Below, piece after piece: positions 3,910 to 62,930 of a DNA stretch of 64,000 nt. A model generated the notes under the pieces. That model was not told where the DNA came from. It saw only the letters and a program-made list of their open reading frames with translations, and made no database searches. The stretch spans positions 186,001-250,000 of IMG/VR virus record IMGVR_UViG_3300045135_002615. One strand, written 5' to 3'. The first letter of the stretch is position 1. The number at the start of each line of letters is the position of its first letter. The position numbers were made by a program, and so were the translations under genes.

Positions 3910-4826
3910 GCGTTATGATAGTGTACGGAAACTGCCCTGAGTTGCTTTTGATAAGAGAGCAAGAAGTGGTTCAAGAGTATCGTGCTAACGGATATGAGGT
4001 TAGATACCTATCAGATAAAGAAGGGGTCTTAGAGGAGGTGTTCTCTAGTGGGCTCTTTGATGTAGACCCTGTACTCGTAGTTATCCATAACCCAACAAAG
4101 GTGAAAGGTCTTAAAGGCTACTTGTCAGACACGAGGGGTTGTGAGGTCTTAGTTGTACATGGCAATGAGCGTTTACCTAAGCTGTTAGAGGGACATCCTT
4201 ATCAGGAGCTCAACGAGCCTAAGTATGATGACCAAAAGGTGACATGGGCGGCGGAGTTTTTACACAACTACATCAAGCGTATGGGTAAGAAGATAGACCC
4301 TAAACTCTGTATTGCTGTCGTACAGAAGTCGGGTACTGATGTCGGTGTACTAAGATGGGAAGCTCACAAGTATGTGATGGCTGTCGGAGACTCAGAAGAG
4401 ATTCCTGCTAAGATCATAGCGGGTCTTTATTCTGAACTGAGTGATCGTTACGCTTCAGACTTGATCAACGCCGTAGCTTCTTGTGATCAGAAGTTCTTCC
4501 TTAAGGTCTGTGCTCGTATGGAGAAGTCCTCTTCAAAGGACTTGACCATGTCTGTCTGTAACGGGCTTTTGTTTTACAAGCTGAAGGAATGGGTAGACGT
4601 GGCAGTCCGCCTAGATGCCAAAGAGAGTTTAGATGACATTGCACACGATCTAGGTATCAACCCATGGAAGCTCACTAACATCTTAGTTCCTCAGATCAAG
4701 TCAATGGGTCTTAACAGAGTAAGGAAGCTCTTGAGGGCTCTCTACGAAGCTGAGGACTCCGTTTTAAAGGGTTCAAGGGGTCCATGGGAGAAGCTCAAGT
4801 CAGGGGTTTTGCTTGCTCTCCAATAG
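3906..4826 (+). CDS. Clamp-loader delta (HolA-like)
   Basis: IVYG start, SGLF, GTDVGVLRWEAHK, LGINPWK and C-terminal D..LKG pattern; translationally coupled to the HolB-like gene. Confidence 0.7.
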   Translation: MSVMIVYGNCPELLLIREQEVVQEYRANGYEVRYLSDKEGVLEEVFSSGLFDVDPVLVVIHNPTKVKGLKGYLSDTRGCEVLVVHGNERLPKLLEGHPYQELNEPKYDDQKVTWAAEFLHNYIKRMGKKIDPKLCIAVVQKSGTDVGVLRWEAHKYVMAVGDSEEIPAKIIAGLYSELSDRYASDLINAVASCDQKFFLKVCARMEKSSSKDLTMSVCNGLLFYKLKEWVDVAVRLDAKESLDDIAHDLGINPWKLTNILVPQIKSMGLNRVRKLLRALYEAEDSVLKGSRGPWEKLKSGVLLALQ

Positions 4827-4835
4827 TCTTTTTAT
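4823..4835 (+). promoter_or_regulatory. ATA-N5-TTTAT element
   Basis: ATAGTCTTTTTAT about 38 nt before the ATG at 4873. Confidence 0.65.
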
Positions 4836-4872
4836 CTGAGGTGCATGGGAGATATTCACATAGGTGGTCACC

Positions 4873-6492
4873 ATGAAGATAGCACATCAGATTTCAGACC
4901 TAGAGTTAAGACTCGCGAATCTTGAGAAAGAAGCGGGCATTGGATCATGGGTGGCAGAGTTCTTTGAAGACCGACCAACTTCAGCGGATTTGATACGGGG
5001 TAAGTACTTCTCTAAAGCTAACATCTCAGAGGTAAAGATAGATAACCTCATCTTGGACGGTAAAGACTTCAGGGGTGCTAACTTTCATCGCTCTTCAATG
5101 AAGTCCACCAAGGCAAAGGGAGCGTCTTTTAAGGGGGCGGGTATGTCGTGGGTAGACCTGAGTGGGTCTGTCTTTAATGGGTGTGACTTTACGGGCGTTG
5201 ATTTCAGGTTTGCCAACTTGAACAATGTCACGTTCAATGGGTGTTCCTTGAAAGGTGTGAAGCTCCACTCTTTAAGGGGTGCCGTCGGCGTTAAAATACT
5301 CAACAGCAATATAGAGGGCTTGACCATCATTGGAGGTGTTTTTAAGAGCCCTATACTCCCTCCCCTTAAGGGGGCATCCTTAAAGGGGGCTTCTTTTGAA
5401 GATTGTGCTCTTTCAGATGTAGAGAGTCCTGTCTCCTGTTCGTTTTACAATTGTGAGATAAATGGTCTGACGGGTGATGTCTTGAGTTCTAAGACGAATC
5501 GGTGTAAGGTTAAGGGTCTTAACCTTACCTCAGCCCAGAACACTCTATTTAAGGGTCTGATTGTGGAGGGTAAGGCTAAGATCAATAAGGGTGTTTCTCT
5601 TAGGTTCTCAGGTGTTCAGTTTATGGGTCCTAGTTTGACTCTAAATTTAATTAGTTCAGTGTTGTATGGTGTGACCTTTAGCAAGTGCTTCGTCTCCAAT
5701 ACCAACATCAAGGACTCAAAAGGAAAGATCGTTATCAGGAGTTGCGAGGGACTTGTTGATTTTAGAAACTGCTCTTTCCCGAACTCTCGGATCGAGAAGT
5801 GTAAAATATCAATGGGTGTCACTGACTTGGACTTGAGTGGTTCTCAGATTGTTAATAATGATCTGAGGTTCACAGGGGCTTCTGATTTAGATGTGACGGG
5901 TGCTGACCTTTCAGGCTCAGAGATTAGCGGGCTCATATACTCCGCAGAGATGAACCCCTCAGATTTTGATCAGGCTCTCATGTCTTTACGAGGTATTCTT
6001 GATGACCCAGGTACACTTAAGGGGTACATGGGTCTAGTCAAAACGATGCACCAAACAAAGGCGATCAAAGCAGAAGTCATTGAGAGAATGGAACGTCATT
6101 ATGACAAAAAGTTCACATCTCTCCGCCCTGAAAAGGAAGAGAAGCTCTTTGTGTTCATCTCTTATCTCAAGTATATAGACTCAGAGCTAAGCCTGATAAG
6201 AGAACTTAGTGGACCCCAACCCCATATTGAGAGCATTGAAAAAATGAATGACCTCCTTGAAGAGAGTACTTCAAACTCTCACAAGAAAGTAGACATTCTT
6301 TTAGGTATCTATCAAGACTATAGTGTACAAGAGCTCTCAGACCTCCTCACTGAAAGAGGGATGAGAAATAGATTACCCTCTGAAGGGCGATCTCTTGACC
6401 TCATATTCCTTAGAGTTGCTATGTTAGCTCTTAATGTTAATGAAAGAGAGCTCATCAAATATCTCAAGGAAGTCCGACCCCTATTTAAGTGA
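4873..6492 (+). CDS. Pentapeptide-repeat protein with N-terminal coiled-coil tag
   Basis: DFRGANF/SFKGA/DLSGS repeats; leader QISDLELRLANLEKEA. Confidence 0.8.
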   Translation: MKIAHQISDLELRLANLEKEAGIGSWVAEFFEDRPTSADLIRGKYFSKANISEVKIDNLILDGKDFRGANFHRSSMKSTKAKGASFKGAGMSWVDLSGSVFNGCDFTGVDFRFANLNNVTFNGCSLKGVKLHSLRGAVGVKILNSNIEGLTIIGGVFKSPILPPLKGASLKGASFEDCALSDVESPVSCSFYNCEINGLTGDVLSSKTNRCKVKGLNLTSAQNTLFKGLIVEGKAKINKGVSLRFSGVQFMGPSLTLNLISSVLYGVTFSKCFVSNTNIKDSKGKIVIRSCEGLVDFRNCSFPNSRIEKCKISMGVTDLDLSGSQIVNNDLRFTGASDLDVTGADLSGSEISGLIYSAEMNPSDFDQALMSLRGILDDPGTLKGYMGLVKTMHQTKAIKAEVIERMERHYDKKFTSLRPEKEEKLFVFISYLKYIDSELSLIRELSGPQPHIESIEKMNDLLEESTSNSHKKVDILLGIYQDYSVQELSDLLTERGMRNRLPSEGRSLDLIFLRVAMLALNVNERELIKYLKEVRPLFK

Positions 6493-9565: not shown

Positions 9566-10093
9566 ATGAGAGATAAGATTAGTCACCTAGAAGCCCGTAT
9601 TGCACTTCTTGAGCGTTCTTCTTCGGATCGCTTCCGTCCGAGTGATCCTGAGCCCGACCCTTCATGGCAACACACGTCCCCCAATGATATTGATGTACGC
9701 GGTCCCGCTGACCGCCCAAATGCGACACCTTCTGAACTGTGGGAGGAGATGAAAAACTACATGGTGGAGAATGGACTTGGTCGTGTTAAGGCTACGCCAG
9801 GCACTGTTTCCTTCTACCTCTTTTACTACCTAGACCCCGAACAATACCTAGACCCCGACCAAGCTAACTATTACCGAGGTCGCGAGCTTGCTGAAATCTT
9901 CGCCAGGATTGTCAGGAACAAAAGAGGATGGACTGACAGAGGATGGACTGCGAGGCAGCTTGGTGGGGACAAGGTACGGGTCACCAAAACCAAAGGTAGA
10001 GCTATTTACAGGGGTGAGCGTATCCATGTAGAAGGAGAAGCCATTTTCAGGGTCACTATCAAAAATGATTGGATCACCATCCACAAGCCTTAA
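9566..10093 (+). CDS. Hypothetical protein with coiled-coil tag
   Basis: MRDKISHLEARIALLER; AAGGAGG RBS. Confidence 0.8.
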   Translation: MRDKISHLEARIALLERSSSDRFRPSDPEPDPSWQHTSPNDIDVRGPADRPNATPSELWEEMKNYMVENGLGRVKATPGTVSFYLFYYLDPEQYLDPDQANYYRGRELAEIFARIVRNKRGWTDRGWTARQLGGDKVRVTKTKGRAIYRGERIHVEGEAIFRVTIKNDWITIHKP

Positions 10094-10103: not shown

Positions 10104-10670
10104 ATGAGAGATAAGATTAGTCAACTAGAAGCCCGTATTGCACGTCTTGAGCGAGAGTCTAAGGAGAAGTATCCTTGGGACGATTGCATCAAAGATCAGA
10201 TGGAGCAGTACGGGGACAAAGAGACTGCTGAGAAGGTCTGTGGCAAGATCAAGGCACAGTCTCAGGGTAAGAAGGCATCAGATGCGGATCGAATGAATGT
10301 GTTCGTAGGCTCTCTCAAACAGCAGCTACCTCGTGACATCAAGATTGAGGTCTCTGTAGTTGACCGTGAGTCTCATGGCACTACTTATTCTGTTAGTATC
10401 TACCCTTTCAATCCGAATATCTATGATCGCATGGACCTTTTGCGTTTCAAGGGTGATCCAAGACGCTCCGCACCTGCCACCCCTGCGGCTAAGGCTTCCA
10501 ATCGTAAAGCTGCCAACGCTATTCGTAAGGCATTGAAGTTGTTCAATGATGACATTAGACTGCTCAATGACTATAGCTATGAAAAGCCAACTTTGAGGAG
10601 ACCAAGAGTTGGTCCAGCGTACTACGATGGTGTTGCACACGAGATTATCGTCCTCGCTTACAATGTCTAA
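10104..10670 (+). CDS. Hypothetical protein with coiled-coil tag
   Basis: MRDKISQLEARIARLER; small WDDCI...KVCG domain ending at KKAS; AAGGAG RBS. Confidence 0.8.
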   Translation: MRDKISQLEARIARLERESKEKYPWDDCIKDQMEQYGDKETAEKVCGKIKAQSQGKKASDADRMNVFVGSLKQQLPRDIKIEVSVVDRESHGTTYSVSIYPFNPNIYDRMDLLRFKGDPRRSAPATPAAKASNRKAANAIRKALKLFNDDIRLLNDYSYEKPTLRRPRVGPAYYDGVAHEIIVLAYNV

Positions 10671-16549: not shown

Positions 16550-17050
16550 ATGTGGAGGAATGGCAAGGGAGATAAAGTGACCCTTACAGATGTTCTCTCA
16601 TTTGTTGAGAAGGCTCATGCAGTAGGGTCACAGGTAGTAGTTGGTACAGATAGTCAGCCTTTCAATCATGGCACTTTCTCTGTGACCGTAATCGCATTCC
16701 TCTCTAGTGATCGCTCCGTGCATGGCAGGTACTTTTACTTAGAACACTCAGAGCTGACTAAACACCACAATCTTTTTGAGAGGATTTATCACGAGGTGAG
16801 CCTCACGATAAACCTACTACATGAGATCAAGCATTTGACCCCTATAGAGGACATAGAAGTCCATATAGACGTGAGCCCTGATAATGGGAAAACAAAGACC
16901 TCACGTTGGTCAAATACCCTTGTTTCGATGGTTAGAGGGTATGGCGTTCGTGAGGTCTGTGTGAAGCCTTCTTCTTGGTGTGCTTCTAAGTTAGCAGATG
17001 CTTACACCAAGAAGAGGAGTATTCGTGTACTGAGGAACAGGGCTCAATAG
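16550..17050 (+). CDS. RNase H-fold YkuK/DUF458-like protein
   Basis: VVGTDSQ, ERIYHEV, IEVHID, KP..W.AS..AD. Confidence 0.8.
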   Translation: MWRNGKGDKVTLTDVLSFVEKAHAVGSQVVVGTDSQPFNHGTFSVTVIAFLSSDRSVHGRYFYLEHSELTKHHNLFERIYHEVSLTINLLHEIKHLTPIEDIEVHIDVSPDNGKTKTSRWSNTLVSMVRGYGVREVCVKPSSWCASKLADAYTKKRSIRVLRNRAQ

Positions 17051-17460
17051 TCGAAGTCTAGGGAGATCTCCAAGAGCTTGATCTCATCCTCTTCGAGAGG
17101 CTCACCGAGTACACTGATCACCATCTCGTAACGGAAGGTCACATCGGGGTCTCCCTCTTCGGGGTAATCTTCACTGTACGCTTTGACTTCCATAGAGTCG
17201 TCATCAGCCCAGTTAACCCAACCAAGATCCTTTAATCTCTCCTTCTTGATAAAGGAGAGTAGGTCTTCAAGGCTCTTGAACTTCTGCTTACGGTACATGG
17301 TGGCATAATCCTGCTCATAGTCACCGCTACCATCAGGGGAGAACCTAGTCTCTACGGAATAGACTGAAACCTCGAACCTATCCTTAGCGGGTTTCCCCCT
17401 AAGAGTCTTTTTTTCAAGGCGGGCAATGCGGCTCTCTAGCTCACTTATCTTGTTGATCAT
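17044..17460 (-). CDS. Acidic hypothetical protein with coiled-coil tag
   Basis: MINKISELESRIARLEKK; motif at 17495-17507. Confidence 0.8.
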   Translation of the reverse strand: MINKISELESRIARLEKKTLRGKPAKDRFEVSVYSVETRFSPDGSGDYEQDYATMYRKQKFKSLEDLLSFIKKERLKDLGWVNWADDDSMEVKAYSEDYPEEGDPDVTFRYEMVISVLGEPLEEDEIKLLEISLDFDY

Positions 17461-17503
17461 TGATCAAATCCTTTCATTACATGTGTAAGGATTTATAAAT
17501 AAG

Positions 17504-17866
17504 TTATCGTTTCCTGTTAGGGTTTCTTGCTTCGTAGTCGATGCGTGCTTTTTGCTTACGGCACTTATCCGAGCAGTATCTTTTTCTGTCTTGAGCCACA
17601 ACTTCTGTGCAATCGTAGTTGTCACAGACCTTGATCGTGACTTCAACGATTTTTGAGATCTTTTCGTTTTGCTGTTGTTGCATCTCTTCTTGTGTGTGTG
17701 GGTATCCCGTCATGCTTCTACCTGGGCATGGGTGATACCAACAGCTCTCATTACTCTCAGGGTAACTTGGGGAGGTAAGTCGAGAGAGGCACTTCCACTT
17801 CTTTTTTCCATCGGAGTCGATAAACCAATGGACTCTGCATTTTCTTGAACCATCTAAAATAGCCAT
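17504..17866 (-). CDS. Cys-rich putative Zn-binding protein
   Basis: C..C...YCSDKCR plus N-terminal Cys/His residues. Confidence 0.65.
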   Translation of the reverse strand: MAILDGSRKCRVHWFIDSDGKKKWKCLSRLTSPSYPESNESCWYHPCPGRSMTGYPHTQEEMQQQQNEKISKIVEVTIKVCDNYDCTEVVAQDRKRYCSDKCRKQKARIDYEARNPNRKR

Positions 17867-23403: not shown

Positions 23404-23811
23404 ATGAAGAAAAAAGCATCAAGTCAGGCAGGGTGGTCTTTACTGACCAGTGGGGTGTCACAAGCGAGGGTGGAAGCACACATTGTGAGGATAGCCCTCA
23501 ATCAGATGCTTGACGCTCTCTCTAACTCTCCACTTAAAGAGGAGTTCTATCGCCTCTGTGGAGACAACCTAGAGGCACTCCCCTTACATCTGAGTAAGAT
23601 GGAGCGTCAGTTAGACAAGACCAACTATGCATTGATCACTATGGGTGGGGATTACTACCGACAGAGGCTGACCCATGAGGATAGAGAGTCAGTGGACATG
23701 GCAGCCAAGTATAATCCGACACCTTCACCCACGCTTACCAAGTCTTCAAGTATAGATGATCTTGAGATGAGGATTGCTTATTTGGAGGATTTGAGGCGTA
23801 AGGCTAAGTGA
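23404..23811 (+). CDS. Putative virion protein with C-terminal coiled-coil tag
   Basis: KKAS start; IDDLEMRIAYLE; GTAGTTCTTTTAT at 23359. Confidence 0.75.
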   Translation: MKKKASSQAGWSLLTSGVSQARVEAHIVRIALNQMLDALSNSPLKEEFYRLCGDNLEALPLHLSKMERQLDKTNYALITMGGDYYRQRLTHEDRESVDMAAKYNPTPSPTLTKSSSIDDLEMRIAYLEDLRRKAK

Positions 23812-27346: not shown

Positions 27347-27397
27347 TTCCTTTTCAATAGTCCTTTTATGAGTGGGTGTAATAAAGTGGAGGTGTCT

Positions 27398-27911: not shown

Positions 27912-29354
27912 ATGGCATTCTTAAGATACGCTAAGGCTAATGTAGTGCGACCTGAACTACATGGTCTTGAATGGGATAAGGTCAGGGTCGCTTCGGGAGA
28001 CAAGAAGCTAAACAAGTCTCTCAAGAAGCAAGCTGAGGATATCCTTGGAGAGCCCTTCACACCCGAAAGATTCCTCCTTACTCACTCTACTATTGTTTGC
28101 TCCGTAGACGCAGTCTCTCCTCCCAATACCAAAACAGGTAATGTTGTTGAAGAAGGGGCTAAGGTAAATCGCAAGTATGCCGATTACAGAGTGTCCCCTG
28201 AGACGGATAAGTTTATCAACAACAACCTTGATTGTTGGTCACGGGGGGTCATCAAGAAGTCTTATCAGACTTTCATTGGGGCACATAACTTCGTGGAGCA
28301 CATCCAAGTTGAGGAACTCTCTAAAGGTCGCATTATTGATGCTGTTCTCCGAGATATTGGTGATAGCCTCTATGTGGATATACTTGTAGCCACAGACCGC
28401 AAGCACAAGGACCTCGTTGATCAAATCGTCTCAGGTAAGATGAACTCCATGAGTATGGGTTGTAGCGTCGAGTTTACGATTTGTACTAAATGCGGGCACG
28501 TTGCCGCTGATGAGACTGAGATGTGTCCCCATGTTAAGTATGAGAAGGGCAACACCTTCTTTGACGAACAGGGTAATAAGCATAGGGTTGCGGAGCTCTG
28601 TGGGCATGAAGATGTAGGAGGTACCGCAGGTGTGACCTTCATTGAAGCCTCATGGGTTGCCACGCCCGCATTCCCTGGTGCAGTAGCCCGCAACACCATT
28701 GAAATCCCATCAGATGAACCTGCTAAGGTTGCAAGCCTTAATGAAGTCCCTGAGAAGTGGATTGCCAAAGCCGCCTCTCTTGTTGACTCTCCTTGGTATG
28801 ACCCTAATGGAGTGCTTAGTAAGGTCGCAGGTCCCTTTGACGACATGGGTGGTGATGACGATAGTGACGGAGATAAAAAAGAAGAAAAGCCCGACCCCTC
28901 ACTACTCTCTCAACTTGAAGGTGTCTATGAAAAGGCGGTTATTGATCGTTTCCGTCAAAAGCTTGAGAATGAGATGAAGAAGGAGAAGGCTCAGGAAGCC
29001 ATGAACCCTCCTATCAGTAAGTCTACTGTCGAGCAAAATGACACCGTCATCAAAGAAGGTCATGTGAACGCAGCTCAGTATCTTAACGCTCTAGAGATCG
29101 CTGTTAAGACCGCCTCTTCAACTGAGGAAGCTGTGTTGAACCTTACTTTGGTCAACAATCACTATGGGGTTAATATCCCTCCTCATGTGTACAAGCTGGC
29201 TTCTAAGCTCGGCTCAACCTCAAACCATAAAGATGTAGATAGTTTCCTTAAGAAGGCTTCTACTCTACATGGTAAAATCTTGTCTAGTTCTGAAGCTCGC
29301 ATCCTAGTTAGGCTAGCTAAGATACTCTCAATCAACTCTTTCGGGCAGAGGTAA
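27912..29354 (+). CDS. Prohead (capsid maturation) protease
   Basis: FVEH, SMSMGC, Zn insert CTKC..C.H, FIEASWVATPA (HK97/assemblin-type pattern); position before scaffold and capsid. Confidence 0.8.
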   Translation: MAFLRYAKANVVRPELHGLEWDKVRVASGDKKLNKSLKKQAEDILGEPFTPERFLLTHSTIVCSVDAVSPPNTKTGNVVEEGAKVNRKYADYRVSPETDKFINNNLDCWSRGVIKKSYQTFIGAHNFVEHIQVEELSKGRIIDAVLRDIGDSLYVDILVATDRKHKDLVDQIVSGKMNSMSMGCSVEFTICTKCGHVAADETEMCPHVKYEKGNTFFDEQGNKHRVAELCGHEDVGGTAGVTFIEASWVATPAFPGAVARNTIEIPSDEPAKVASLNEVPEKWIAKAASLVDSPWYDPNGVLSKVAGPFDDMGGDDDSDGDKKEEKPDPSLLSQLEGVYEKAVIDRFRQKLENEMKKEKAQEAMNPPISKSTVEQNDTVIKEGHVNAAQYLNALEIAVKTASSTEEAVLNLTLVNNHYGVNIPPHVYKLASKLGSTSNHKDVDSFLKKASTLHGKILSSSEARILVRLAKILSINSFGQR

Positions 29355-29389: not shown

Positions 29390-31036
29390 ATGTCTAGGTA
29401 TGACCGTTCAAATAAGTCTCGCAGGGCTATGGCTACACGTCGCCGTCGCTTTGCAAACTCTTCTATCCCTGGCTCAGACAACCTAGGTTGGGAGCACTTC
29501 GGACACCCCGCTGCTGGCGAGCAACCTGCTGTCGATGAGTATGGTTTTGATAGCGAGTTCGGTGAGGGCGTTCGCAAGGGTCCTTACAGCTCTGGTGCCG
29601 CTCCTGCCTCTTATGGTTGGTCTCCTGAGCACCCCGCTGCTTCAGACATGGTTCGTGAGGATTACGCCATGACTGAGACCCTCCGTAACGAGAACCTCAA
29701 GAAGGCTATGGAGCGTAAGGCAGCTAAGTGCATTGAGATTGCTGAGTCACGCCTCGGTAAATATGCGAGTGCCTCTGAGATTGAGGATCTTGCTCTTCGT
29801 TTCATGGATCTCCCCAACAGCGTTGTGAATGGTCGTGTCGCTTCTCTTCGTAATGCTGATAACGCTGTTCAGATGAACACAGGCTATGAGGGTCTTGACT
29901 TCACAGGTCCTGGTAACGCAGGTTCTGATCTTGAGGCAGACGAGTGGATGTCTGACGAGTTCGAGGCTGACATGGACATGATGGCTGATGAGCTTGAGGC
30001 AGACGAGTGGATGTCTGATGAGTTCGAGGCTGACATGGACATGATGGCTGATGAGTTCGAGGCTGATGAGCTTGAGGCTGACATGGACATGATGGCTGAG
30101 GACATTGAGGCACATGATCTCTTTGACGAGTATGACCTCGATGGTGATGACCTCATCTCCCGTGATGAGTGGGGCGGTAGCATGGGGGCGTTCGATGTAA
30201 TGGATCTTGATGAGGATGACTTCCTCTCTCGTGATGAGGTTGCTATGGGTCTAGGTGACTCTTTCGGCAACCCTTCACAGGCGGAGATGCTCGCTGAGGA
30301 GATTTCTAATCTTAAGCAAGCTAATGCCCGCCTCGCCCGTCAGGTTCGTAAGCTTGCCGATAACGCAGTTCAGCAAGCTACGGACTACACCGTAGAGGAC
30401 TTCAGCGATCCTATCGACACTACACCTGAGTCTGAGGAGGGTGAGGGCACTCCTACTCAGCGTCTTGCCCGTCTTGAGCGTCTCGCATCTGTACTCGCAG
30501 ATTACATGGGAGAGCTTGAGGCTGAGGAGGAGATGTCTGACATGAATGATCCTCACTACGGCTACTCAAAGGCAGCAGGTGATGAGCCCGAAGAGGAAGA
30601 GGGTGACGATGAGGATCTTGAGGAAGATGCCAAGAATGTTGCAGAGACCGCAGAAGATCCTAAGTCTGAGAAGAAGGCTTCTGAGGATCTTGAGGAAGAG
30701 GAGGCTGAGGAAGAGGAGACTGAGTCTGAGAAGAAGGCTTCTGACGACAACATGGGTCTCGATGTAGAGGACGGTGACATGGAGATTGATCCTCGTCTTG
30801 CTTCTATCTTCACCGCTTCTGACGAGGAAGAGGCTGAGGAAGAGGAGGCTGAGGAAGAGGAGACTGAGGGAGAGGAGCCTAAGTCTGAGAAGAAGGCTTC
30901 TTACAAGCCCGCTATCAATACTCGTCAGGCAAGTGTTAAGACCCTCGGTAACATCAGCCGTGAGGCTTCTGCTTCTTCTGATGAGCTCAGCAAGCTTTGG
31001 GCTTCAGCTCCTGACGTGAGCAAGTTCTTCGGTTAA
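29390..31036 (+). CDS. Capsid scaffolding protein with EF-hand pair
   Basis: Highly acidic, coiled coils, between protease and capsid genes; many [KR]xAS sites. Confidence 0.75.
   Translation: MSRYDRSNKSRRAMATRRRRFANSSIPGSDNLGWEHFGHPAAGEQPAVDEYGFDSEFGEGVRKGPYSSGAAPASYGWSPEHPAASDMVREDYAMTETLRNENLKKAMERKAAKCIEIAESRLGKYASASEIEDLALRFMDLPNSVVNGRVASLRNADNAVQMNTGYEGLDFTGPGNAGSDLEADEWMSDEFEADMDMMADELEADEWMSDEFEADMDMMADEFEADELEADMDMMAEDIEAHDLFDEYDLDGDDLISRDEWGGSMGAFDVMDLDEDDFLSRDEVAMGLGDSFGNPSQAEMLAEEISNLKQANARLARQVRKLADNAVQQATDYTVEDFSDPIDTTPESEEGEGTPTQRLARLERLASVLADYMGELEAEEEMSDMNDPHYGYSKAAGDEPEEEEGDDEDLEEDAKNVAETAEDPKSEKKASEDLEEEEAEEEETESEKKASDDNMGLDVEDGDMEIDPRLASIFTASDEEEAEEEEAEEEETEGEEPKSEKKASYKPAINTRQASVKTLGNISREASASSDELSKLWASAPDVSKFFG
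29933..30100 (+). repeat. 63-bp tandem repeats (EADEWMSDEFEADMDMMADEL)
   Basis: Units start at 29933 and 29996, plus a partial third. Confidence 0.9.
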
Positions 31037-31053: not shown

Positions 31054-31066
31054 ATAGTCCTTTTAT
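31054..31066 (+). promoter_or_regulatory. ATA-N5-TTTAT element for the decoration/capsid operon
   Basis: TCAATAGTCCTTTTAT, identical to the copy at 27354. Confidence 0.7.
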
Positions 31067-31795: not shown

Positions 31796-32674
31796 ATGAG
31801 CAATACCGTAGATAACAGCGTTAAGAACAAGATCATCAGCGACTTCATCAAGACCCCTCAGGGTCGTGCTAAGCTCGCTGCTTCAATGACTCAGCCCCTC
31901 CGCCTCCGCCGTGACTATACATCAGTCGGCCGTAAGACCTTCCAGGTCGAGCAGCTTCCTGATGGAGCACTCCCCATCTACGACAAGGATCCCGATGTGA
32001 CCGCATTTGTCGTTGGTGAGGAAGGCGAGAACATCCTCGCTATCACCAAGCCACGCCGTGTGATCTTCCCTCTCTTCGAGATCGCATCTAACCCTGAGAT
32101 TCCCCTCACACAGATCAAGGAGCGTAGATTCGACCTCATCGAGCGTGCTCAGGATCTCGCTAGGGCTCAGATTCAGGCGGCTGAGGACGAGCGTGTGTTC
32201 GCTATACTCGATGCCGTTGCAGCTAACGGCTTCGACAGCGTTGCAGGTCAGACTAACGCTGACATCCCTGTCATCGCTCCTCTCAATGGTGCTGTCCTCG
32301 CTGACGCATTCGCACAGATCGAGCGTCACGACCTTCGCGTTGCCCGCGTATTCATGAACGCTCGTGACTACGCTGACATCCGTAAGTTCGGCCGTGATAT
32401 TCTCGACATCGAGAGCCAGGCTGCTCTCCTCAAGACTGGTCTTCAGGCTACTCTTTGGGGTGCTCAGATCATCACATCACGTCTCGTGCCTGTCGGTACG
32501 GTGTACGTCTGCTGTGAGCCTGAGATGTTCGGACGTATCCCCGTTCGTACTGAGCTCACCGTCCTCTCTGCTGACGATCCTAAGGCTCGTACAATTGGCT
32601 TCAGCGTCTTTGAGAATTTGGGCATTGGTGCCTACAACCCTCGCGGTCTAGTCCGCCTCACTGTTACTCGCTAA
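31796..32674 (+). CDS. Major capsid protein (HK97 fold)
   Basis: 292 aa; strongest codon bias; module position; GRAKLAASM..PLR...DY..VGRK, WGAQI, C-terminal NPRG; followed by a terminator. Confidence 0.88.
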   Translation: MSNTVDNSVKNKIISDFIKTPQGRAKLAASMTQPLRLRRDYTSVGRKTFQVEQLPDGALPIYDKDPDVTAFVVGEEGENILAITKPRRVIFPLFEIASNPEIPLTQIKERRFDLIERAQDLARAQIQAAEDERVFAILDAVAANGFDSVAGQTNADIPVIAPLNGAVLADAFAQIERHDLRVARVFMNARDYADIRKFGRDILDIESQAALLKTGLQATLWGAQIITSRLVPVGTVYVCCEPEMFGRIPVRTELTVLSADDPKARTIGFSVFENLGIGAYNPRGLVRLTVTR

Positions 32675-32961: not shown

Positions 32962-33216
32962 ATGTCTTTAGATAAAAGAAAACTAGAAGAAGTCTTTGGA
33001 GAAGCTGAGATGGCATTTTGGGATGCTGTCGCATCGTCTTTTCCTGAAATCAAAAGTGGAGATCTCTCTCCATCTGACTCTGCCAAACTTGAAAAAGCCA
33101 TGAAAGAGGCAATCCAATCTTGGTATGTGGGCAATCAGCCTGCGGGTGAATCAACCAGCCAGATTGTCCGTAATCTTGAGCGTAGGGTTGCCCGACTCGA
33201 AAAGTCATCAAGGTAA
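32962..33216 (+). CDS. Small protein with C-terminal coiled-coil tag
   Basis: AGGAGG RBS; IVRNLERRVARLEK. Confidence 0.75.
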   Translation: MSLDKRKLEEVFGEAEMAFWDAVASSFPEIKSGDLSPSDSAKLEKAMKEAIQSWYVGNQPAGESTSQIVRNLERRVARLEKSSR

Positions 33217-34299: not shown

Positions 34300-34815
34300 A
34301 TGAGACACTTAACAGCAAGTCAGAAGATCGCTCACCTTGAGCATCGCCTCGCTCGTCTTGAAAGAAGAGCTACGCATTGGACTGATGTCTACCATCCGAG
34401 TGAGATGGTAGACGGCTACGTTGATGATATGGGCTACGAGAAGTACCCACCCAGCTATAGCCAAGGACCGGTATGTGACTCTATAGCAAGAGAGATGAGT
34501 CGCCGCCTGAAAAGGAAGGGTTATAATATCCAACATATGCCTGATTGGGTTGGGTATAGGATTCACCTCCCTTTGAATGGGATCACTTATGAGATGATAA
34601 ACTCAGATACTGATCCAAGTCTACCTCTCTGTAAAGAGTTAGTTCTCCAGGTAATGAAGGACGCAGGTCTTAAGGGTCATGTGTACTACAGGAGAGGGTC
34701 TCACTACTACAGGAAAGAGCTTGCGGGGGGTCGCTGTCTCCTTAGTATTAGTTGCTCACAAGATGAGGGTCTGAGCTTTGATGTAGACAGGGTGATAACC
34801 CGACGTAGGAGATAA
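34300..34815 (+). CDS. Hypothetical protein with coiled-coil tag
   Basis: GGAG RBS; MRHLTASQKIAHLEHRLARLERRA. Confidence 0.8.
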   Translation: MRHLTASQKIAHLEHRLARLERRATHWTDVYHPSEMVDGYVDDMGYEKYPPSYSQGPVCDSIAREMSRRLKRKGYNIQHMPDWVGYRIHLPLNGITYEMINSDTDPSLPLCKELVLQVMKDAGLKGHVYYRRGSHYYRKELAGGRCLLSISCSQDEGLSFDVDRVITRRRR

Positions 34816-34868
34816 GGGGGTTATACTCCATTTATCACCACCACATCAGGCACCAACTAAAGGAGGAG

Positions 34869-35243
34869 ATGTCCATGAGACACTTAACAGCTAGTCAAAA
34901 AATCGCTCAACTTGAATCCCGTATCGCCCGTCTAGAGAAGCAAGCCTCTTTGAGAAGAGGTCTCGACAGGGAGGAGGAAACCGTCTTAGATGAAGTAATC
35001 CACCACTACAGACTCAGGCCACGAGACTATGAAGATGTCGAAATTAGTATTGAGGATCAGGTAGGGCGTGGGGAAGATAGGATCGTGCTCTATGAGGTGT
35101 CTCTTTTCAAAGAAGACGGGGATAGCTTTACTTGCTATGTCCTTTATGACGCTTACGAAGAATTGGTGGAAGGGTTTTACGATTACCAAGATGATTATGA
35201 AGCCCAAAGAGCCTTTGACTCACTAGTAGAGCGACACGCATAA
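34869..35243 (+). CDS. Acidic hypothetical protein with coiled-coil tag
   Basis: MRHLTASQKIAQLESRIARLEKQAS; motif at 34823-34835. Confidence 0.8.
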   Translation: MSMRHLTASQKIAQLESRIARLEKQASLRRGLDREEETVLDEVIHHYRLRPRDYEDVEISIEDQVGRGEDRIVLYEVSLFKEDGDSFTCYVLYDAYEELVEGFYDYQDDYEAQRAFDSLVERHA

Positions 35244-37143: not shown

Positions 37144-37146
37144 CTA

Positions 37147-44997: not shown

Positions 44998-45642
44998 TTA
45001 GGAAGCTAAGAGCTCTTTTACAATTTGGTCGCAGGTAAGAGATCCTCTCTTCATGTCTACAAGGCTAATCTCAACCATGCGACCGTCCAAGAAAACTCTC
45101 AATCTAGGTCGGAATGGATGCTCAAGTACCATCTCACCACCTACTGCCACACCATGTCTTTCTAAGCGGCTCTTTATTTTATTAAACTGACTACTTGCTC
45201 TCTCCATAGCTATTTGAGCTTCAAAGTGTAATGTAAACAGTTTTTGTGTTCTACTTAAAGTCAAAGACCCTGAATCTAATGTGTGGGTGAGTACCATGCC
45301 CTTCACTCCGAAATCGACATGGACATCACCTCCTTCATTGGGTTGGCACACCTTACCTGCCAAAAGTATCGTGTGTCCCTTGTACAGCACTTTAGCGGAC
45401 AGGTGAAAGTTCTTGTCGTTCACTTTCACCTTTGCTGAATACACATCTCTTAGTGATTCCAATGTGGCTTCCACGTCACTTGCTATATCATCCCCTTTAA
45501 GAAAAAGGGGTATGTTTACAATCCCTCCCCTGTAGACTTTAAGTTCACCTTCAACATCTTTAATGTATAAGGCTGCCTTCTTCTCAAGGTGGCTGATCCT
45601 TTTTTCTAAATCATAGATTCGTTCCACAGCTGTCTTTCTCAT
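44998..45642 (-). CDS. Hypothetical protein with coiled-coil tag
   Basis: MRKTAVERIYDLEKRISHLEKKAA; AGGAG RBS; motif variant at 45680-45692. Confidence 0.78.
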   Translation of the reverse strand: MRKTAVERIYDLEKRISHLEKKAALYIKDVEGELKVYRGGIVNIPLFLKGDDIASDVEATLESLRDVYSAKVKVNDKNFHLSAKVLYKGHTILLAGKVCQPNEGGDVHVDFGVKGMVLTHTLDSGSLTLSRTQKLFTLHFEAQIAMERASSQFNKIKSRLERHGVAVGGEMVLEHPFRPRLRVFLDGRMVEISLVDMKRGSLTCDQIVKELLAS

Positions 45643-49768: not shown

Positions 49769-49799
49769 CGAGGATCTCCATGTGAAAGGACTATGAAAC

Positions 49800-57605: not shown

Positions 57606-58613
57606 ATGATCGCTGAATATATATGGGTAGATGGTAGTGAACCTACGGCTCGTTTGAGATCAAAGACCAAGATTTTTCACGAGGAGGTCGAAGAGTGGCC
57701 TCTGTGGTCTTTTGATGGTTCTTCCACTAACCAAGCCACAGGAGATCGTTCGGATTGTATCCTTCAACCCGCCGCGATCATTAATGACCCTCTCAGGGGA
57801 GGAGACAATGTCCTCATTCTCTGTGAGGTGTTTAATGCCGATGGGACACCCCACCCAACCAACAACAGAGCTAGGCTTCGTGAAGCCCTTAAAGGGCATG
57901 AGGACTTAGACGCATGGGTGGGCTTTGAGCAAGAGTATACTTTGTTCTCAGGTTCTCGCCCATTAGGGTTTCCTTCTGAACGTAGGTTCCCACCTGCTCA
58001 AGGTCCTTATTACTGTGGTGTGGGGTCAGATGAGGTAGCAGGTAGGGCTCTAGTAGAGAAGCACCTTGATATGTGTCTAAAGGCAAAGATACCTCTTACG
58101 GGTATTAATGCTGAGGTCATGCCTGGTCAATGGGAGTACCAAGTGGGTGGTCCCAATGTAGACCCTCTAGCAGGTTCTGACTTTGTGTGGTTGTCTAGGT
58201 GGTTGCTTTACCGCTTAGGTGAACACTATGAGTTAACCGCGACCCTCGATCCTAAGCCTGTGCCAGGTGATTGGAATGGTGCGGGTATGCACACAAACTT
58301 CTCAACTAGGGCGATGCGTGAAGAGGGTGGTATTGAGGAGATATACAAGGCGGTGGAAACCATTGGCACTCACATCAAGAACCACTTGGATCGCTATGGT
58401 AATGGGATTGAGTCTCGTCTAACAGGCTTGCATGAGACATGTAGATATGACGTATTCAAGTACGGGGTTTCAGACCGTACAGCTTCTATCCGCATCCCTC
58501 TTGAGACTGTCAGGAATGGTTGTGGTTACTTTGAGGATCGCAGACCTAATGCGAATGCTGATCCTTATCTTGTCAGTGAGGCACTTATCCGTAGCATCAC
58601 GGGGACGTGGTAA
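57606..58613 (+). CDS. glnII: Glutamine synthetase type II
   Basis: AEYIWVDG, FDGSST.QA, GFEQEY, NAEVMPGQWE, DWNGAG.HTNFS, RLTGLHET, EDRRP. Confidence 0.95.
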   Translation: MIAEYIWVDGSEPTARLRSKTKIFHEEVEEWPLWSFDGSSTNQATGDRSDCILQPAAIINDPLRGGDNVLILCEVFNADGTPHPTNNRARLREALKGHEDLDAWVGFEQEYTLFSGSRPLGFPSERRFPPAQGPYYCGVGSDEVAGRALVEKHLDMCLKAKIPLTGINAEVMPGQWEYQVGGPNVDPLAGSDFVWLSRWLLYRLGEHYELTATLDPKPVPGDWNGAGMHTNFSTRAMREEGGIEEIYKAVETIGTHIKNHLDRYGNGIESRLTGLHETCRYDVFKYGVSDRTASIRIPLETVRNGCGYFEDRRPNANADPYLVSEALIRSITGTW

Positions 58614-59982: not shown

Positions 59983-60638
59983 ACATGTTTAAGAGTGCTT
60001 CAAAGACCCCTCGTACCATGCGTAGAATTTATGAGGAGGTAGACTCTCCTATGGGTGGTCCAGCTAATGAGAATGCGGACTACTTTGGTGAGATCACTGT
60101 CAGTGATAACCACATCTACCTCTATCGAGGGATCACACCTAAGTCTGTTATGGAGATGGGGATTGCCATCAAAACCATTAGTCAACAGATCGTCAACATG
60201 GTGACTGACCTTGACCTACCTTCAGCTCCACCTATCCATCTCCATATCAACTCAGGAGGTGGGTGTGCTTTCAGTGGACTTGCGGGTGCAAGTCATATTT
60301 TAGGTTCAGACATCCCTGTGTTCACTTATGTTGAGGGTTCTGCTGCATCAGCGGCGACCATTATGTCTTGTGTTGGAGCAAAGCGTTTCATCACCGAGCA
60401 TAGCTTTATGTTGATCCATCAGATCAGCACTGGTGTGTGGGGTACATATGAGAACCTGAAGGACGAGAAGGAGTCTATGGATGCACTCATGGCTCAACTT
60501 GAGGGGATCTACTTGAAGAACACGAAACTCAAGAAGAAGGACCTGAAAGAGCTGTTGAAGCGTGACCTATGGCTCAATGCAGATCAATGTTTAGAGAAGG
60601 GTCTGGTAGACGAGGTCATCAAGTACGAGAGGGTTTAA
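59979..60638 (+). CDS. clpP: ClpP-like protease
   Basis: INSGGG, AASAAT, MLIHQ, RDLWLNA...GLVD. Confidence 0.85.
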   Translation: MNMFKSASKTPRTMRRIYEEVDSPMGGPANENADYFGEITVSDNHIYLYRGITPKSVMEMGIAIKTISQQIVNMVTDLDLPSAPPIHLHINSGGGCAFSGLAGASHILGSDIPVFTYVEGSAASAATIMSCVGAKRFITEHSFMLIHQISTGVWGTYENLKDEKESMDALMAQLEGIYLKNTKLKKKDLKELLKRDLWLNADQCLEKGLVDEVIKYERV

Positions 60639-61177
60639 AGAGGACACGCCTCATGTGAGGGGTCTTTCTCACCTGCGTAATAGACGGTGACCACATTAAC
60701 CATAGACCCTTCAACTTCAAATACCACAATCAAGTCACCGAGTGCTTCTGCTCTCCACTTGAGTCTTTGTCCCATAAAGATACGCTCTTTGATCTGCTCG
60801 ATGACCCTTGATCTCTTGTTGTAGTTCTGTCGAAGGTATCTACCAAACAGGTTGAAGTAAGTCTTTAGGTCACCTATAGTCACACCTCTCTGATCCATAC
60901 GGAACTGAGCGTGTGTGGTGATCTTCATCCTCTTGAATGTCTTATCCCCAACTCGTTCAAACTCTAGGTCATAGATATTATGAGTGTACGAGTCAGGGAT
61001 GGCTTGTCCTTCTTGAACGATTCTCACAAGTTGCCTCTTTAGTTTAGGGTTTCGGATATTATCCTCGATCCTCCTCTTAGTGTGGCATACTCCGCCTGGG
61101 TATCCGAGTGGAGGGTTCAAGTCCGAGATACGCTCAAGTCGAGCGACCCTCATGATTAGTCGGTCTATCTTGTTCAT
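60635..61177 (-). CDS. Tagged protein with DUF4258/RelE-like putative RNase domain
   Basis: MNKIDRLIMRVARLER; TTHAQFRMDQRG...VVF...VVTVY. Confidence 0.6.
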   Translation of the reverse strand: MNKIDRLIMRVARLERISDLNPPLGYPGGVCHTKRRIEDNIRNPKLKRQLVRIVQEGQAIPDSYTHNIYDLEFERVGDKTFKRMKITTHAQFRMDQRGVTIGDLKTYFNLFGRYLRQNYNKRSRVIEQIKERIFMGQRLKWRAEALGDLIVVFEVEGSMVNVVTVYYAGEKDPSHEACPL

Positions 61178-61229
61178 TTTTTAGCTCCTTTATGTACTTA
61201 ATGTGATGAATTCATAAAGGAGCTATGAC

Positions 61230-62930
61230 ATGGACCCTATCGACCGACTAATCTCAAGCCTCAACAAGAAGGTTATCCGTAAACTCGCCGCTGAAGACCT
61301 CCCTACCTTTGAGGAAGCGATCAAGGGAAAGACCTTCAAGAACCCTAATACGGGTAATGACGTTCAGTTTGGATCACTCCCTGCCGAAGAGCAGAAGAAG
61401 ATCCGTGCTGAATATGACAAGAAGGTGGAGGAGCTTGAAGGAGAGGGTAAGGGTAAGGGAGAGAAGAAGCCTCTCAAAAAGATGACCAAGGTTCAATTGC
61501 TTGATCAGCTTGAAGGGGATAAGGACTTCTCAGGGGTTGATCTCACTAAGTTTAAAGACTTTGATTGGTCAAGTGTGGATTTGAGGGGTGCTAACTTCTC
61601 AGGTTCAGACCTGACAGGTGCGTACTTTGGTGTTGGTTCTAGACTCGAAGGAGCGAACTTTGAGGGTGCTAATCTTTCAGGTGTCGAGTTCAGAGGGAAA
61701 AAGGGTTATGGCGTGAGCCCGTACAGCGATACTCCAGATACTGTCCATAAAAACGTCAACTTCAAGGGTGCTAATCTTGAAGGTGCGGAGATGTCTTTTC
61801 TTCGTTTTGAAAATTCAGATTTAAGCGGTGCTAATCTAAAGGGTGCTGAGCTTGACGCGGTGATGATAGATAGAAAATGCACCGTAAGAGGTGCTGACTT
61901 TGAGGGTGCAACCTTTCATGCCTCCCAATTCAATGGCGTCAATCTGAAGGGTGTGAACTTTGCGGGAGCAACCATAAAGTCTGGGGGTGGATATAATAAC
62001 AGTAGAAGAACCTTCGACAGAGCGAACATCTCAGGTGCAGACTTCTCAGGTGCAAACTTCGCCTTCGGTGACGCTTTTAGGTTTGGTGGTAACTTTGGGA
62101 AACCCGCCAAAATAAATGGAGCTAAGTTTAGATTTGATGTTCTAGAAAGTGTGGGAACTAAAGAATTTAAAGCATTTGGCTTTGATAAAGACAATCCTCC
62201 TGAAGGCTTGTCCGATAAGGTTCTACATAAAATGGTTGGTGGTAGGGAGTACCTAGAGTATAGGGAGGCTGAAGAAGATAAAGCTGAAGAAGCTAAAGCT
62301 AAGGCTGATGCGGAAGCCAAAGCTAAAGCTGATGAGGAAGCCAAAGCCAAAGCTAAAGCTGATGAGGAAGCCAAAGCCAAAGCTAAGGCTGATGAGGAAG
62401 CTAAAGCTAAGGCTGATGCTGAAGCCAAAGCTAAGGCTGATGCTGAAGCCAAAGCTAAGGCTAAAGCTGAAGCCAAAGCTAAGGCTGATGCTGAAGCCAA
62501 GGCTAAGGCTGATGAGGAAGCCAAAGCTAAAGCTAAGGCTGATGAGGAAGCCAAAGCCAAGGCTAAGGCTGATGAGGAAGCCAAAGCTAAAGCTGAGGAA
62601 GAAGAGAAGATCAAAGAGAACTCAAAACGTCTTAAAGACCTTGAGTCTAAGATTAAAGCCGTTAAGAAGAAAGATGATCTCATTGACCTTGTGTCTGAGC
62701 TAGGTAGGATGAAGGGTCAACTCTCAAACGCTAAGTTTAAGGACAAACTAGAGTCTGAGATGAAGGCTGTCGATAAAGCTGTACAAAACGCGAAAGAGAA
62801 CACGTCTTTCACGGGTAGGATTAAGAGCTTCTTCGGTCTAGGTAAAAAGGCAAGGCTCAAGGAAGCCCGACTCTTGCTCAATGGACTTCAGGATGAGATC
62901 GAGCATCTCAAGAGGGACATCAACCGCTGA
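61230..62930 (+). CDS. Pentapeptide-repeat protein with TolA-like Ala/Lys/Glu helix
   Basis: GANF/GANL/GADF repeats; KAKADEEA repeats; RKLAA and KKAR sites. Confidence 0.85.
   Translation: MDPIDRLISSLNKKVIRKLAAEDLPTFEEAIKGKTFKNPNTGNDVQFGSLPAEEQKKIRAEYDKKVEELEGEGKGKGEKKPLKKMTKVQLLDQLEGDKDFSGVDLTKFKDFDWSSVDLRGANFSGSDLTGAYFGVGSRLEGANFEGANLSGVEFRGKKGYGVSPYSDTPDTVHKNVNFKGANLEGAEMSFLRFENSDLSGANLKGAELDAVMIDRKCTVRGADFEGATFHASQFNGVNLKGVNFAGATIKSGGGYNNSRRTFDRANISGADFSGANFAFGDAFRFGGNFGKPAKINGAKFRFDVLESVGTKEFKAFGFDKDNPPEGLSDKVLHKMVGGREYLEYREAEEDKAEEAKAKADAEAKAKADEEAKAKAKADEEAKAKAKADEEAKAKADAEAKAKADAEAKAKAKAEAKAKADAEAKAKADEEAKAKAKADEEAKAKAKADEEAKAKAEEEEKIKENSKRLKDLESKIKAVKKKDDLIDLVSELGRMKGQLSNAKFKDKLESEMKAVDKAVQNAKENTSFTGRIKSFFGLGKKARLKEARLLLNGLQDEIEHLKRDINR
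62280..62600 (+). repeat. AKAKAD(E/A)E low-complexity tandem repeats
   Basis: Repeated GCTAAGGCTGATGAGGAAGCCAAA units. Confidence 0.95.

What the first reader, a model, noticed from the sequence alone, without database searches (positions are those of the whole stretch)
4823..62930. Dispersed 'tag, package and cleave' capsid-cargo system
Seen in the sequence: ten unrelated proteins share a 13-20 aa amphipathic tag, consensus [KQR]IxxLExR[IVL]AxLE. It is N-terminal at 4873, 9566, 10104, 17460(-), 34300, 34869, 45642(-) and 61177(-), and C-terminal at 23404 and 32962. In several it is followed at once by a [KR]xA site (EKEAG, ERRAT, EKQAS, EKKAA). The scaffold has similar helices (EISNLKQANARLARQVRKLA, QRLARLERLAS). 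Most of these genes follow the same ATA-N5-TTTAT element as the head genes. Established: T4 internal proteins use a capsid-targeting leader that the prohead protease removes. Inference: here a portable coiled coil docks any passenger on the scaffold core, the protease frees it, and it is ejected at infection. Tagged passengers include a pentapeptide-repeat protein, a putative RNase and small acidic proteins; untagged genes with the same promoter encode peptidases and membrane-like proteins. This would be a modular, engineerable protein-delivery system.
Basis: partly seen in the sequence, partly recalled or inferred. Interest (0 to 1): 0.92.

Follow-up and report, generated by a model that had tools for sequence, protein, structure and literature searches.

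The report
Shared address tag on phage proteins
An uncultured giant phage puts the same short helical tag on the ends of many unrelated small proteins, most likely to load them into the virus head as phage T4 does, but that role has not been tested.

Summary
Ten ORFs in the window carry a [K]I[SA]xLExR[ILV]AxLE[KR] peptide, eight at the N-terminus and two at the C-terminus. Each held-out tag ranks in the top 10 of 56,698 six-frame positions. The ten passenger parts are mutually unrelated.

The window belongs to a 297-kb uncultured jumbo phage distantly related to Bacillus phage G. In close relatives the tag is a fixed 24-residue leader, MRRSASEIIRNLExRIARLE[KR]Q[AS]S. It matches 1,135 protein clusters among 1.84 billion and is absent from 185,579 bacterial and archaeal genomes. 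Almost all passengers are ORFans. A sister lineage uses a different leader (LRSKLIRLAHxNPxLRPxLLPLLK) in the same way.

Many tagged genes share a promoter-like box with the head genes. The second half of the tag recurs between domains of some tagged proteins. Its best non-tag match in the window is a helix in the putative scaffold.

The best explanation is a T4-like capsid-targeting leader that a prohead protease removes (confidence about 0.5). Docking, cleavage and ejection are all untested inferences. I rate it a new variant of a known kind.

The parts
4873..4938 (+). N-terminal tag (MKIAHQISDLELRLANLEKEAG) of a 539-aa pentapeptide-repeat protein (gene 4873-6492)
9566..9625 (+). N-terminal tag of a 175-aa ORFan (gene 9566-10093)
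10104..10163 (+). N-terminal tag of a 188-aa ORFan (gene 10104-10670)
17401..17460 (-). N-terminal tag (MINKISELESRIARLEKKTL) of a 138-aa ORFan (gene 17044-17460)
34300..34374 (+). N-terminal tag of a 171-aa ORFan (gene 34300-34815)
34869..34949 (+). N-terminal tag of a 124-aa ORFan (gene 34869-35243). AlphaFold2 models the tag as helix 8-29 ahead of an alpha/beta domain.
45571..45642 (-). N-terminal tag (MRKTAVERIYDLEKRISHLEKKAA) of a 214-aa ORFan (gene 44998-45642)
61124..61177 (-). N-terminal variant tag (MNKIDRLIMRVARLERIS) of a 180-aa protein with a weak DUF4258 hit (gene 60635-61177)
23743..23808 (+). C-terminal tag of a 135-aa protein (gene 23404-23811). Orthologues in relatives lack it.
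33154..33213 (+). C-terminal tag of an 84-aa ORFan just downstream of the capsid gene (gene 32962-33216)
27912..29354 (+). Prohead (head maturation) protease, 480 aa. Its C-terminal helix (29277-29327, SSEARILVRLAKILS) is conserved across the clade.
29390..31036 (+). Putative scaffolding protein: acidic, repetitive, and placed between the protease and capsid genes. It has five E[KR]xA[SGTA] sites.
30461..30490 (+). Scaffold helix RLARLERLAS, the best non-tag match to the second half of the tag in the window proteome
31796..32674 (+). Major capsid protein (HK97-type, 292 aa)
4823..4835 (+). Promoter-like box ATAGTCTTTTTAT upstream of tagged gene 4873
17495..17507 (-). Promoter-like box upstream of tagged gene 17460
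34823..34835 (+). Promoter-like box upstream of tagged gene 34869
61214..61226 (-). Promoter-like box upstream of tagged gene 61177
27357..27369 (+). The same box ahead of the p180-protease-scaffold gene string
31054..31066 (+). The same box ahead of the p195-capsid gene pair

Best explanation
The tag is a portable prohead-targeting leader, the functional counterpart of the T4 capsid targeting sequence. Its two heptads (I at position a, L at d, E at e, R/K at g) form an amphipathic helix. This helix would attach whatever protein carries it to the assembling head core. The likely partner is the fast-evolving scaffold and not the almost invariant capsid protein. The prohead protease would then cut at or near the conserved end of the tag (R-[IV]-A-R-L-E-[KR]-x-[AS]-[SAG]) and leave the passenger free inside the head. 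The passengers are hypervariable ORFans, so they are plausibly injected host-takeover or anti-defence proteins.

Shown: the tag, its portability, its position at protein ends, selection at the protein level, its abundance, a promoter box shared with head genes, internal copies of the half-tag, and a second leader type in a sister lineage.

Inferred: the destination (the head), the partner (the scaffold), the cleavage and the ejection.
For: (1) The same leader sits on unrelated passengers. The 10 window passengers are unrelated. In relatives, 122 unique tagged proteins fall into 94 passenger clusters. A leader profile finds 1,135 cluster representatives among 1.84e9 proteins, and in nearly all of the top 150 the match starts at residue 1.
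(2) Conservation stops abruptly after [KR]-Q-[AS]-[SAG], as expected of a removable propeptide.
(3) The second half alone (R[IV]ARLE[KR][QS][AS]S) recurs internally or at the C-terminus in 11 of the top 150 proteins, often between two domains. This behaviour fits a linear processing or docking site.
(4) A second-half PSSM built only from relatives places scaffold RLARLERLAS as the best non-tag hit of 18,707 window positions (14.7 bits; next 7.1). The window scaffold holds 5 E[KR]xA[SGTA] sites against 0.30 expected.
(5) A prohead protease and a putative scaffold are encoded next to the capsid gene.
(6) The box ATA-N5-TTTAT (17 against 1.7 expected) precedes both head operons and tagged genes. 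In relatives, 45 of 119 tagged genes have it 34-58 nt upstream, against 84 of 758 control ORFs.
(7) Selection acts on the peptide. The core arginines use both AGR and CGN codons, and C-terminal copies exist.
(8) LR745208.1 (capsid 88% identical, scaffold about 37%) has no such tag in its 485 kb. It has another leader on 8 unrelated proteins, and IMG/VR holds 19 more on 19 unrelated passengers. The leader therefore varies while the capsid protein does not.
(9) No recognisable replication or metabolic enzyme carries the tag; 4 of 94 and 3 of 150 passengers have any Pfam hit.
(10) T4 precedent (PMC9026906): N-terminal CTS propeptides of 10-19 residues sit on divergent internal proteins, are cut by gp21, and can carry foreign proteins into the head.
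Against: There is no physical evidence: no cultured relative carries the tag, and no virion proteome or interaction test is available. The scaffold resemblance is weak in relatives (5-7 bits), and their scaffolds are not enriched in E[KR]xA[SGTA]. The tag does not contain the cleavage motifs known for T4 (L/I-x-E) or SPN3US proteases, and the specificity of this protease is unknown. The promoter box also precedes genes that are unlikely to be structural. In the C-terminal tags a cut after the tag would remove almost nothing. At least 13-14 different tagged proteins per genome is many for one head, though SPN3US has about 50 head proteins (PMC10052503).
Confidence: 0.5

Rival explanations
1. 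The tag is a shared docking or oligomerisation helix for some other destination. Candidates are the outside of the capsid, the tail or fibre network, or a hub protein in the infected cell. On this reading it is not cleaved.
For: The heptad pattern with I at a, L at d and E/R at e/g fits a parallel coiled coil. It works at either end of a protein. AlphaFold2 models it as a long exposed helix. Generic coiled coils with the same core occur at tail-fibre C-termini and in IS3 OrfA.
Against: Two heptads are too few for a stable free coiled coil (established knowledge of coiled coils). The strict position at residue 1-8, the sharp conservation boundary and the internal half-tags between domains fit a processed propeptide better. 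No candidate hub was identified.
Confidence: 0.2
2. The conserved unit is mainly an expression cassette (promoter, 5' UTR and first codons) that spreads by recombination. The peptide itself would then have no sorting role.
For: In the MRRSASE lineage the promoter box, a 5' UTR (TAAGTGATCTC..TTAACC..AATGGAGAA) and strongly biased first codons (AGA AGA, GAA) are conserved together.
Against: The core arginines switch between AGR and CGN codons while the residue is invariant. The window phage keeps the peptide without the conserved UTR. C-terminal and internal copies exist. Rfam finds no RNA family there.
Confidence: 0.1
3. The tag is a recognition signal for a chaperonin or for a regulated protease (a degron), not a capsid address.
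For: The window encodes a GroEL-like chaperonin (48386-49801-, PHROG 4e-24). The reference list of PMC10052503 cites a paper reporting that the T4 head-protein N-terminus directs proteins to GroEL.
Against: Nothing links the chaperonin gene to tagged genes. Degrons and chaperonin signals are not known as 24-residue coiled-coil leaders. The second-half copies between domains and the scaffold match are not explained.
Confidence: 0.08

Closest known systems
T4 capsid targeting sequence (CTS) of internal proteins IPI/IPII/IPIII and Alt, removed by prohead protease gp21 (PMC9026906)
   Same: A short terminal propeptide is shared by otherwise unrelated, fast-evolving small proteins. The genes are dispersed through the genome. 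The phage encodes a prohead protease and a scaffolding core. C-terminal propeptides also exist in T4 (gp21, Alt). The precedent shows that such a leader can carry foreign proteins into the head.
   Different: There is no sequence similarity. This leader is 24 residues against 10-19, is an explicit two-heptad coiled coil, and lacks the L/I-x-E cleavage motif. The scale is far larger (at least 13-14 per genome, 1,135 clusters overall). Sister lineages use a different leader. Incorporation and cleavage are unproven here.
N-terminal propeptides of head and ejection proteins of giant phages SPN3US and phiKZ, cut by gp245/gp175 (PMC10052503, PMC5694885)
   Same: A jumbo-phage head holds many internal proteins. 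Some propeptides are short (20 and 24 residues). The protease has a C-terminal propeptide.
   Different: Those propeptides are not one shared portable sequence, and the cleavage motif and capsid protein lineage differ. The capsid protein here is a 292-aa phage-G-type protein (38% identical to gp27).
Encapsulin cargo-loading peptides and the HK97 protease C-terminal targeting tail
   Same: A short terminal peptide addresses cargo to the inside of an HK97-fold shell. The protease here also has a conserved C-terminal helix.
   Different: Those peptides bind the shell protein. Here the leader changes between lineages while the shell protein stays 88-100% identical, which points to another partner. 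There is no sequence resemblance. The context is a tailed jumbo phage with scaffold and protease.
Bacillus phage G and Tunturiibacter phage Tunturi_5 (nearest cultured relatives by capsid protein)
   Same: Homologous capsid protein (38% and 47% identical) and protease (31% and 44%), with the same order of head genes.
   Different: No tag was found within 20 kb either side of their capsid genes. The p195 and p829 proteins show no BLASTP similarity to their positional counterparts.

Membership tests
T4-type capsid targeting sequence system | One short terminal propeptide shared by otherwise unrelated proteins of the same phage | tested here: met
   10 unrelated passengers in the window; 94 clusters from 122 proteins; 1,135 clusters globally
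T4-type capsid targeting sequence system | The phage encodes a prohead protease and a scaffolding core | tested here: met
   Protease: phrog_18299 at 5.8e-15, and 44% identity to Tunturi_5 gp331, which is annotated as head maturation protease. The scaffold is assigned only by position, acidity and repeats; it has no family hit.
T4-type capsid targeting sequence system | The propeptide ends in the protease's cleavage motif, which also occurs in the scaffold and other substrates | tested here: inconclusive
   In the window, E[KR]xA[SGTA] occurs 11 times against 3.9 expected, with 9 of the 11 in tags and scaffold. The scaffold alone has 5 against 0.30, but the scaffolds of relatives are not enriched. 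Internal half-tags occur in 11 of 150 proteins. The protease's specificity is unknown.
T4-type capsid targeting sequence system | Tagged proteins are physically in the prohead or virion and are processed | not testable with these tools
   No cultured tag-bearing phage and no proteome are available.
T4-type capsid targeting sequence system | Sequence relationship to the T4 CTS and the L/I-x-E site | tested here: not met
   The leader logo has no L/I-x-E at its boundary; P1-P3 before the boundary are [AS], Q, [KR]. This is an analogue, not a homologue.
Encapsulin cargo-loading peptide | The shell lacks phage morphogenesis genes, and the cargo peptide binds the shell protein | tested here: not met
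   The contigs are jumbo-phage contigs of 200-375 kb with protease, scaffold and tRNAs. The leader type differs between lineages that share an 88-100% identical capsid protein.
Autonomous leucine-zipper oligomerisation domain | A heptad a/d hydrophobic core long enough (three to four or more heptads) to fold alone | tested here: not met
   The a/d pattern I-L-I-L is present but covers only two heptads, and conservation ends after it.
Sec/Tat signal peptide | A hydrophobic h-region after a basic n-region | tested here: not met
   MRRSASE is followed by an amphipathic, charged helix with no hydrophobic stretch.

The most novel reading that the evidence does not exclude
Phage-G-related jumbo phages of environmental metagenomes use interchangeable, lineage-specific 'address labels' (at least two types). 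These load a very large and fast-turning arsenal of ORFan effector proteins (more than 1,000 families) into the head for co-injection with the DNA. Internal half-tags would act as processing sites that release several effectors from one precursor. This would be the largest natural protein-delivery repertoire described for any phage group, and a ready-made list of candidate injected anti-defence proteins.
Probability: 0.35. Interest if true: 0.85.

Novelty: new variant of a known kind. Interest (0 to 1): 0.7.

Why it matters
How giant phages choose which proteins go inside the head is poorly understood. The only well-defined address signal is the 10-residue T4 CTS. A sequence-defined leader found on more than a thousand unrelated protein families would make the question testable by proteomics or by co-expression of four genes. 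It would also mark out a large set of candidate injected host-takeover or anti-defence proteins in abundant uncultured phages. If the function holds, it offers a second, longer and possibly orthogonal packaging tag. If the destination turns out not to be the head, it is still an undescribed protein-sorting label.

Tried and rejected
1. Megablast of the head region against cultured phages found no match. A 25-aa tag query by tblastn also found nothing, because it is too short or was filtered.
2. Literature searches for the two motifs and for related concepts found nothing relevant. The phage G multi-omics paper mentions no leader.
3. The protease gave no sequence match in the PDB. AlphaFold2 on a 14-sequence alignment gave pLDDT 45 for the catalytic part, so no fold search was run on it.
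4. The 34869 passenger was modelled at pLDDT 87.6, but Foldseek against the PDB gave no hit with E<0.03.
5. Homology of p195 to the phage G decoration protein gp26, and of p829 to the Tunturi_5 'DNA ejection protein', was tested and not found; only their positions correspond.
6. The idea that a scaffold cleavage motif E[KR]xA[S] is general to the clade was rejected; it holds only in this phage.
7. The idea that the protease C-terminal helix co-varies with leader type was rejected; it is conserved in both lineages. Its match to the first half of the tag is only 4.6 bits.
8. Passenger pI is bimodal like the rest of the proteome and is not informative.
9. A de novo search for other leader classes in the 80 capsid-anchored loci found only spurious off-frame ORFs.
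Full report
**Observation.** Nine match the strict pattern [ILV]..LE.R[ILV][AS].LE, and the tenth (61177-) is a variant. Eight lie at the start of their ORF. Two lie at the very end of theirs (genes 23404-23811 and 32962-33216).

A 15-column PSSM finds nothing else of at least 12 bits in the six-frame translation. Residue shuffles give 0.14 such hits per shuffle and never exceed 16 bits, against 33-45 bits for the tags. In leave-one-out tests that also drop the neighbouring near-identical tag, each held-out tag still ranks in the top 10 of 56,698 positions. With the tags removed, no two of the ten proteins are similar (no BLASTP E<0.1). This includes the adjacent pairs 9566/10104 and 34300/34869.

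**What the window is.** It is part of a jumbo phage.
- A head maturation protease lies at 27912-29354 (phrog_18299, 5.8e-15) and a major head protein at 31796-32674 (phrog_2522, 1e-51). The window also holds a ribonucleotide reductase, methyltransferases, a GroEL-like chaperonin, lysis enzymes and two tRNAs.
- Between the protease and the capsid gene lies a 548-aa, very acidic, repetitive protein with no family hit. I take it to be the scaffold from its position and composition.
- The capsid protein is 100% identical to that of IMG/VR contig 3300045135_002615 (296,642 bp). It is 92-97% identical in hundreds of other IMG/VR contigs of up to 375 kb.
- It is 88% identical in the 485-kb uncultured phage LR745208.1, 47% in Tunturiibacter phage Tunturi_5 and 38% in Bacillus phage G gp27.
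- The order of the head genes matches Tunturi_5 and phage G. However, p195 and p829 show no sequence similarity to their positional counterparts there.

**The tag beyond the window.** In close relatives the tag is longer and almost fixed: M-R-R-[ST]-A-S-E-[IV]-I-R-N-L-E-x-R-[IV]-A-R-L-E-[KR]-Q-[AS]-[SAG]. Conservation stops abruptly after it.
- The more specific pattern found only three chance matches in the representative genomes of 185,579 bacterial and archaeal species.
- In all fetched loci the PSSM gave 217 N-terminal hits, 22 C-terminal hits and 14 others. The hits outside the clade are ordinary coiled coils, at tail-fibre C-termini and in the IS3 OrfA zipper.
- The 122 unique complete N-tagged proteins fall into 94 passenger clusters, with a median length of 153 aa.
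- Single genomes hold at least 13-14 distinct tagged genes. This is a lower bound from partial coverage.
- A profile of the first 32 residues was searched against 1.84 billion cluster representatives. It found 1,135 proteins at E<=1e-3 and 182 at E<=1e-10. In nearly all of the top 150 the match starts at residue 1.
- Almost all passengers are ORFans. Only 4 of 94 and 3 of 150 have any Pfam hit: pentapeptide repeats, a JmjC/cupin domain, WGR and an OB fold. PHROGs adds nothing. No recognisable replication or metabolic enzyme is tagged.

**Protein or nucleic acid?** The two invariant core arginines use both AGR and CGN codons, and other columns use several codons. Copies also exist at C-termini and inside proteins. 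Selection therefore acts on the peptide. The first codons are strongly biased (AGA AGA, GAA). In the MRRSASE lineage the promoter box, a 5' UTR and the ribosome-binding region are conserved together with the leader, so the whole 5' cassette probably spreads by recombination. The window phage keeps the peptide without that UTR. Rfam finds nothing but the two tRNAs.

**Promoter box.** ATA-N5-TTTAT occurs 17 times against 1.7 expected.
- It precedes tagged genes 4873, 17460, 34869 and 61177. It also precedes the 9077/9566/10104 gene string and, in a variant form, 23404.
- It precedes the head gene strings that start at p180 and p195, and in a variant form p829.
- It also precedes an untagged pentapeptide protein, a C39-like peptidase and several ORFans. 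A further box lies within the gene upstream of a glutamine-synthetase-like gene, about 113 nt before its start.
- In relatives, 45 of 119 tagged genes have it 34-58 nt before the ATG, against 84 of 758 control ORFs. There it also precedes the head operons and lipoprotein-like genes.
- It most likely marks a transcription class that includes the head genes. It does not mark virion membership as such.

**Links to head assembly.**
1. A PSSM of the second half of the tag, built only from relatives, ranks the nine window tags that have a canonical second half first. Next comes scaffold RLARLERLAS, the best of all non-tag positions (14.7 bits, with the next at 7.1; 18,707 positions). The helix is conserved in the scaffolds of relatives as QRLA[KR][IL]ERLA but scores low there.
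2. E[KR]xA[SGTA], the ending of four window tags, occurs 11 times in the window proteome against 3.9 expected. Five are in the scaffold, against 0.30 expected. This enrichment does not hold in the scaffolds of relatives.
3. Of the top 150 global hits, 11 carry an extra copy of only the second half (x-R[IV]ARLE[KR][QS][AS]S), often between two domains or at the C-terminus. By my rough residue-frequency estimate, about 0.06 would be expected by chance. This is how a linear processing or docking site would behave.
4. The protease has a clade-wide conserved C-terminal helix, RL[VI]RLAKLLS. Its likeness to the tag is weak.

AlphaFold2 on a single sequence (pLDDT 87.6) models the 34869 tag as a helix spanning residues 8-29 ahead of a compact alpha/beta domain.

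**A second leader.** LR745208.1 has no RIARLE-type tag anywhere in its 485 kb. A de novo search for shared N-termini recovered the window's eight N-terminal tags as a positive control. In LR745208.1 it found a different leader, M(x)TLRSKLIRLAHxNPxLRPxLLPLLK[ET]A, on eight mutually unrelated proteins, two of them beside the capsid gene. A DNA scan found this leader on 19 unique proteins with 19 unrelated passengers, from at least 15 IMG/VR contigs. The architecture is therefore general, and the sequence is specific to each lineage. The capsid protein is nearly the same in both lineages while the scaffold is about 37% identical. The partner of the leader is thus more likely the scaffold than the capsid protein. 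This last step is inference.

**Mechanism.** The best-supported reading is a T4-like capsid targeting leader (PMC9026906). An amphipathic two-heptad helix docks the passenger on the prohead core, and the protease cuts near the conserved boundary. The freed passengers stay in the head and may be ejected. I give this a confidence of about 0.5, because destination, partner, cleavage and ejection are all inferred.

The rivals are:
- a docking helix for another destination, such as the capsid surface, the tail or an intracellular hub (0.2);
- an expression cassette whose peptide is incidental (0.1; contradicted by codon switching and by the C-terminal and internal copies);
- a chaperonin or degron signal (0.08).

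**Comparison with known systems.** It works like the T4 CTS but is not homologous to it. The sequence and length differ, the L/I-x-E site is absent, the scale is far larger, and the leader types can be exchanged between lineages. It is not an encapsulin loading peptide or a secretion signal, and it is too short to be an autonomous zipper. I found no description of either leader in the searchable literature.

**Verdict.** It is a new variant of a known kind, with interest 0.7.

Noticed in passing
LR745208.1 (loci L083, L204-L213); IMG/VR loci L281-L304: A second, unrelated N-terminal leader, M(x)TLRSKLIRLAHxNPxLRPxLLPLLK[ET]A. It sits on 8 unrelated proteins of a 485-kb sister phage and on 19 unrelated proteins in IMG/VR contigs.
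   Followed up: yes
L012:12466-12530, 13552-13614, 14722-14786, 16961-17025 and similar sites in L004, L088, L112: Tagged genes of the MRRSASE lineage share a whole 5' cassette: the promoter box TAGTTTNTTTAT, then TAAGTGATCTC..TTAACC..AATGGAGAA, then the leader. Head genes share only the box.
   Followed up: partly
L005 and L201 (27-aa ORF); P0044, P0049 and others: ORFs that consist of little more than the leader (27-46 aa). They may be decayed genes, contig-end fragments or free tags.
   Followed up: no
window 61182-61226 with genes 60635-61177(-) and 61230-62930(+): Two promoter-like boxes face apart between a tagged gene and an untagged 566-aa pentapeptide-repeat protein. That protein's C-terminal part resembles tape-measure families (PHROG 6e-7).
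   Followed up: partly
window 29390-31036: The putative scaffold has tandem acidic repeats (DE[LF]EADEWMSDEFEADMDMMA) and three SEKKAS sites. Its last 40 residues are nearly invariant across the clade.
   Followed up: partly
window 48386-49801(-), 57606-58613(+), 20661-21389(+): A GroEL-like chaperonin, a glutamine-synthetase-like protein and a DUF481 protein are encoded by the phage.
   Followed up: no
window 14129-15690, 36219-37473, 38336-40252: There are several DNA methyltransferase-like genes. The one at 38336-40252 combines a methyltransferase part with a stretch resembling anaerobic ribonucleotide reductase families.
   Followed up: no
window 23404-23811 compared with L042, L006, L060: The conserved 113-aa domain that carries a C-terminal tag in this phage is untagged in relatives. 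In some relatives the same reading frame stays open for about 550 codons and ends in a hydrophobic tail.
   Followed up: partly
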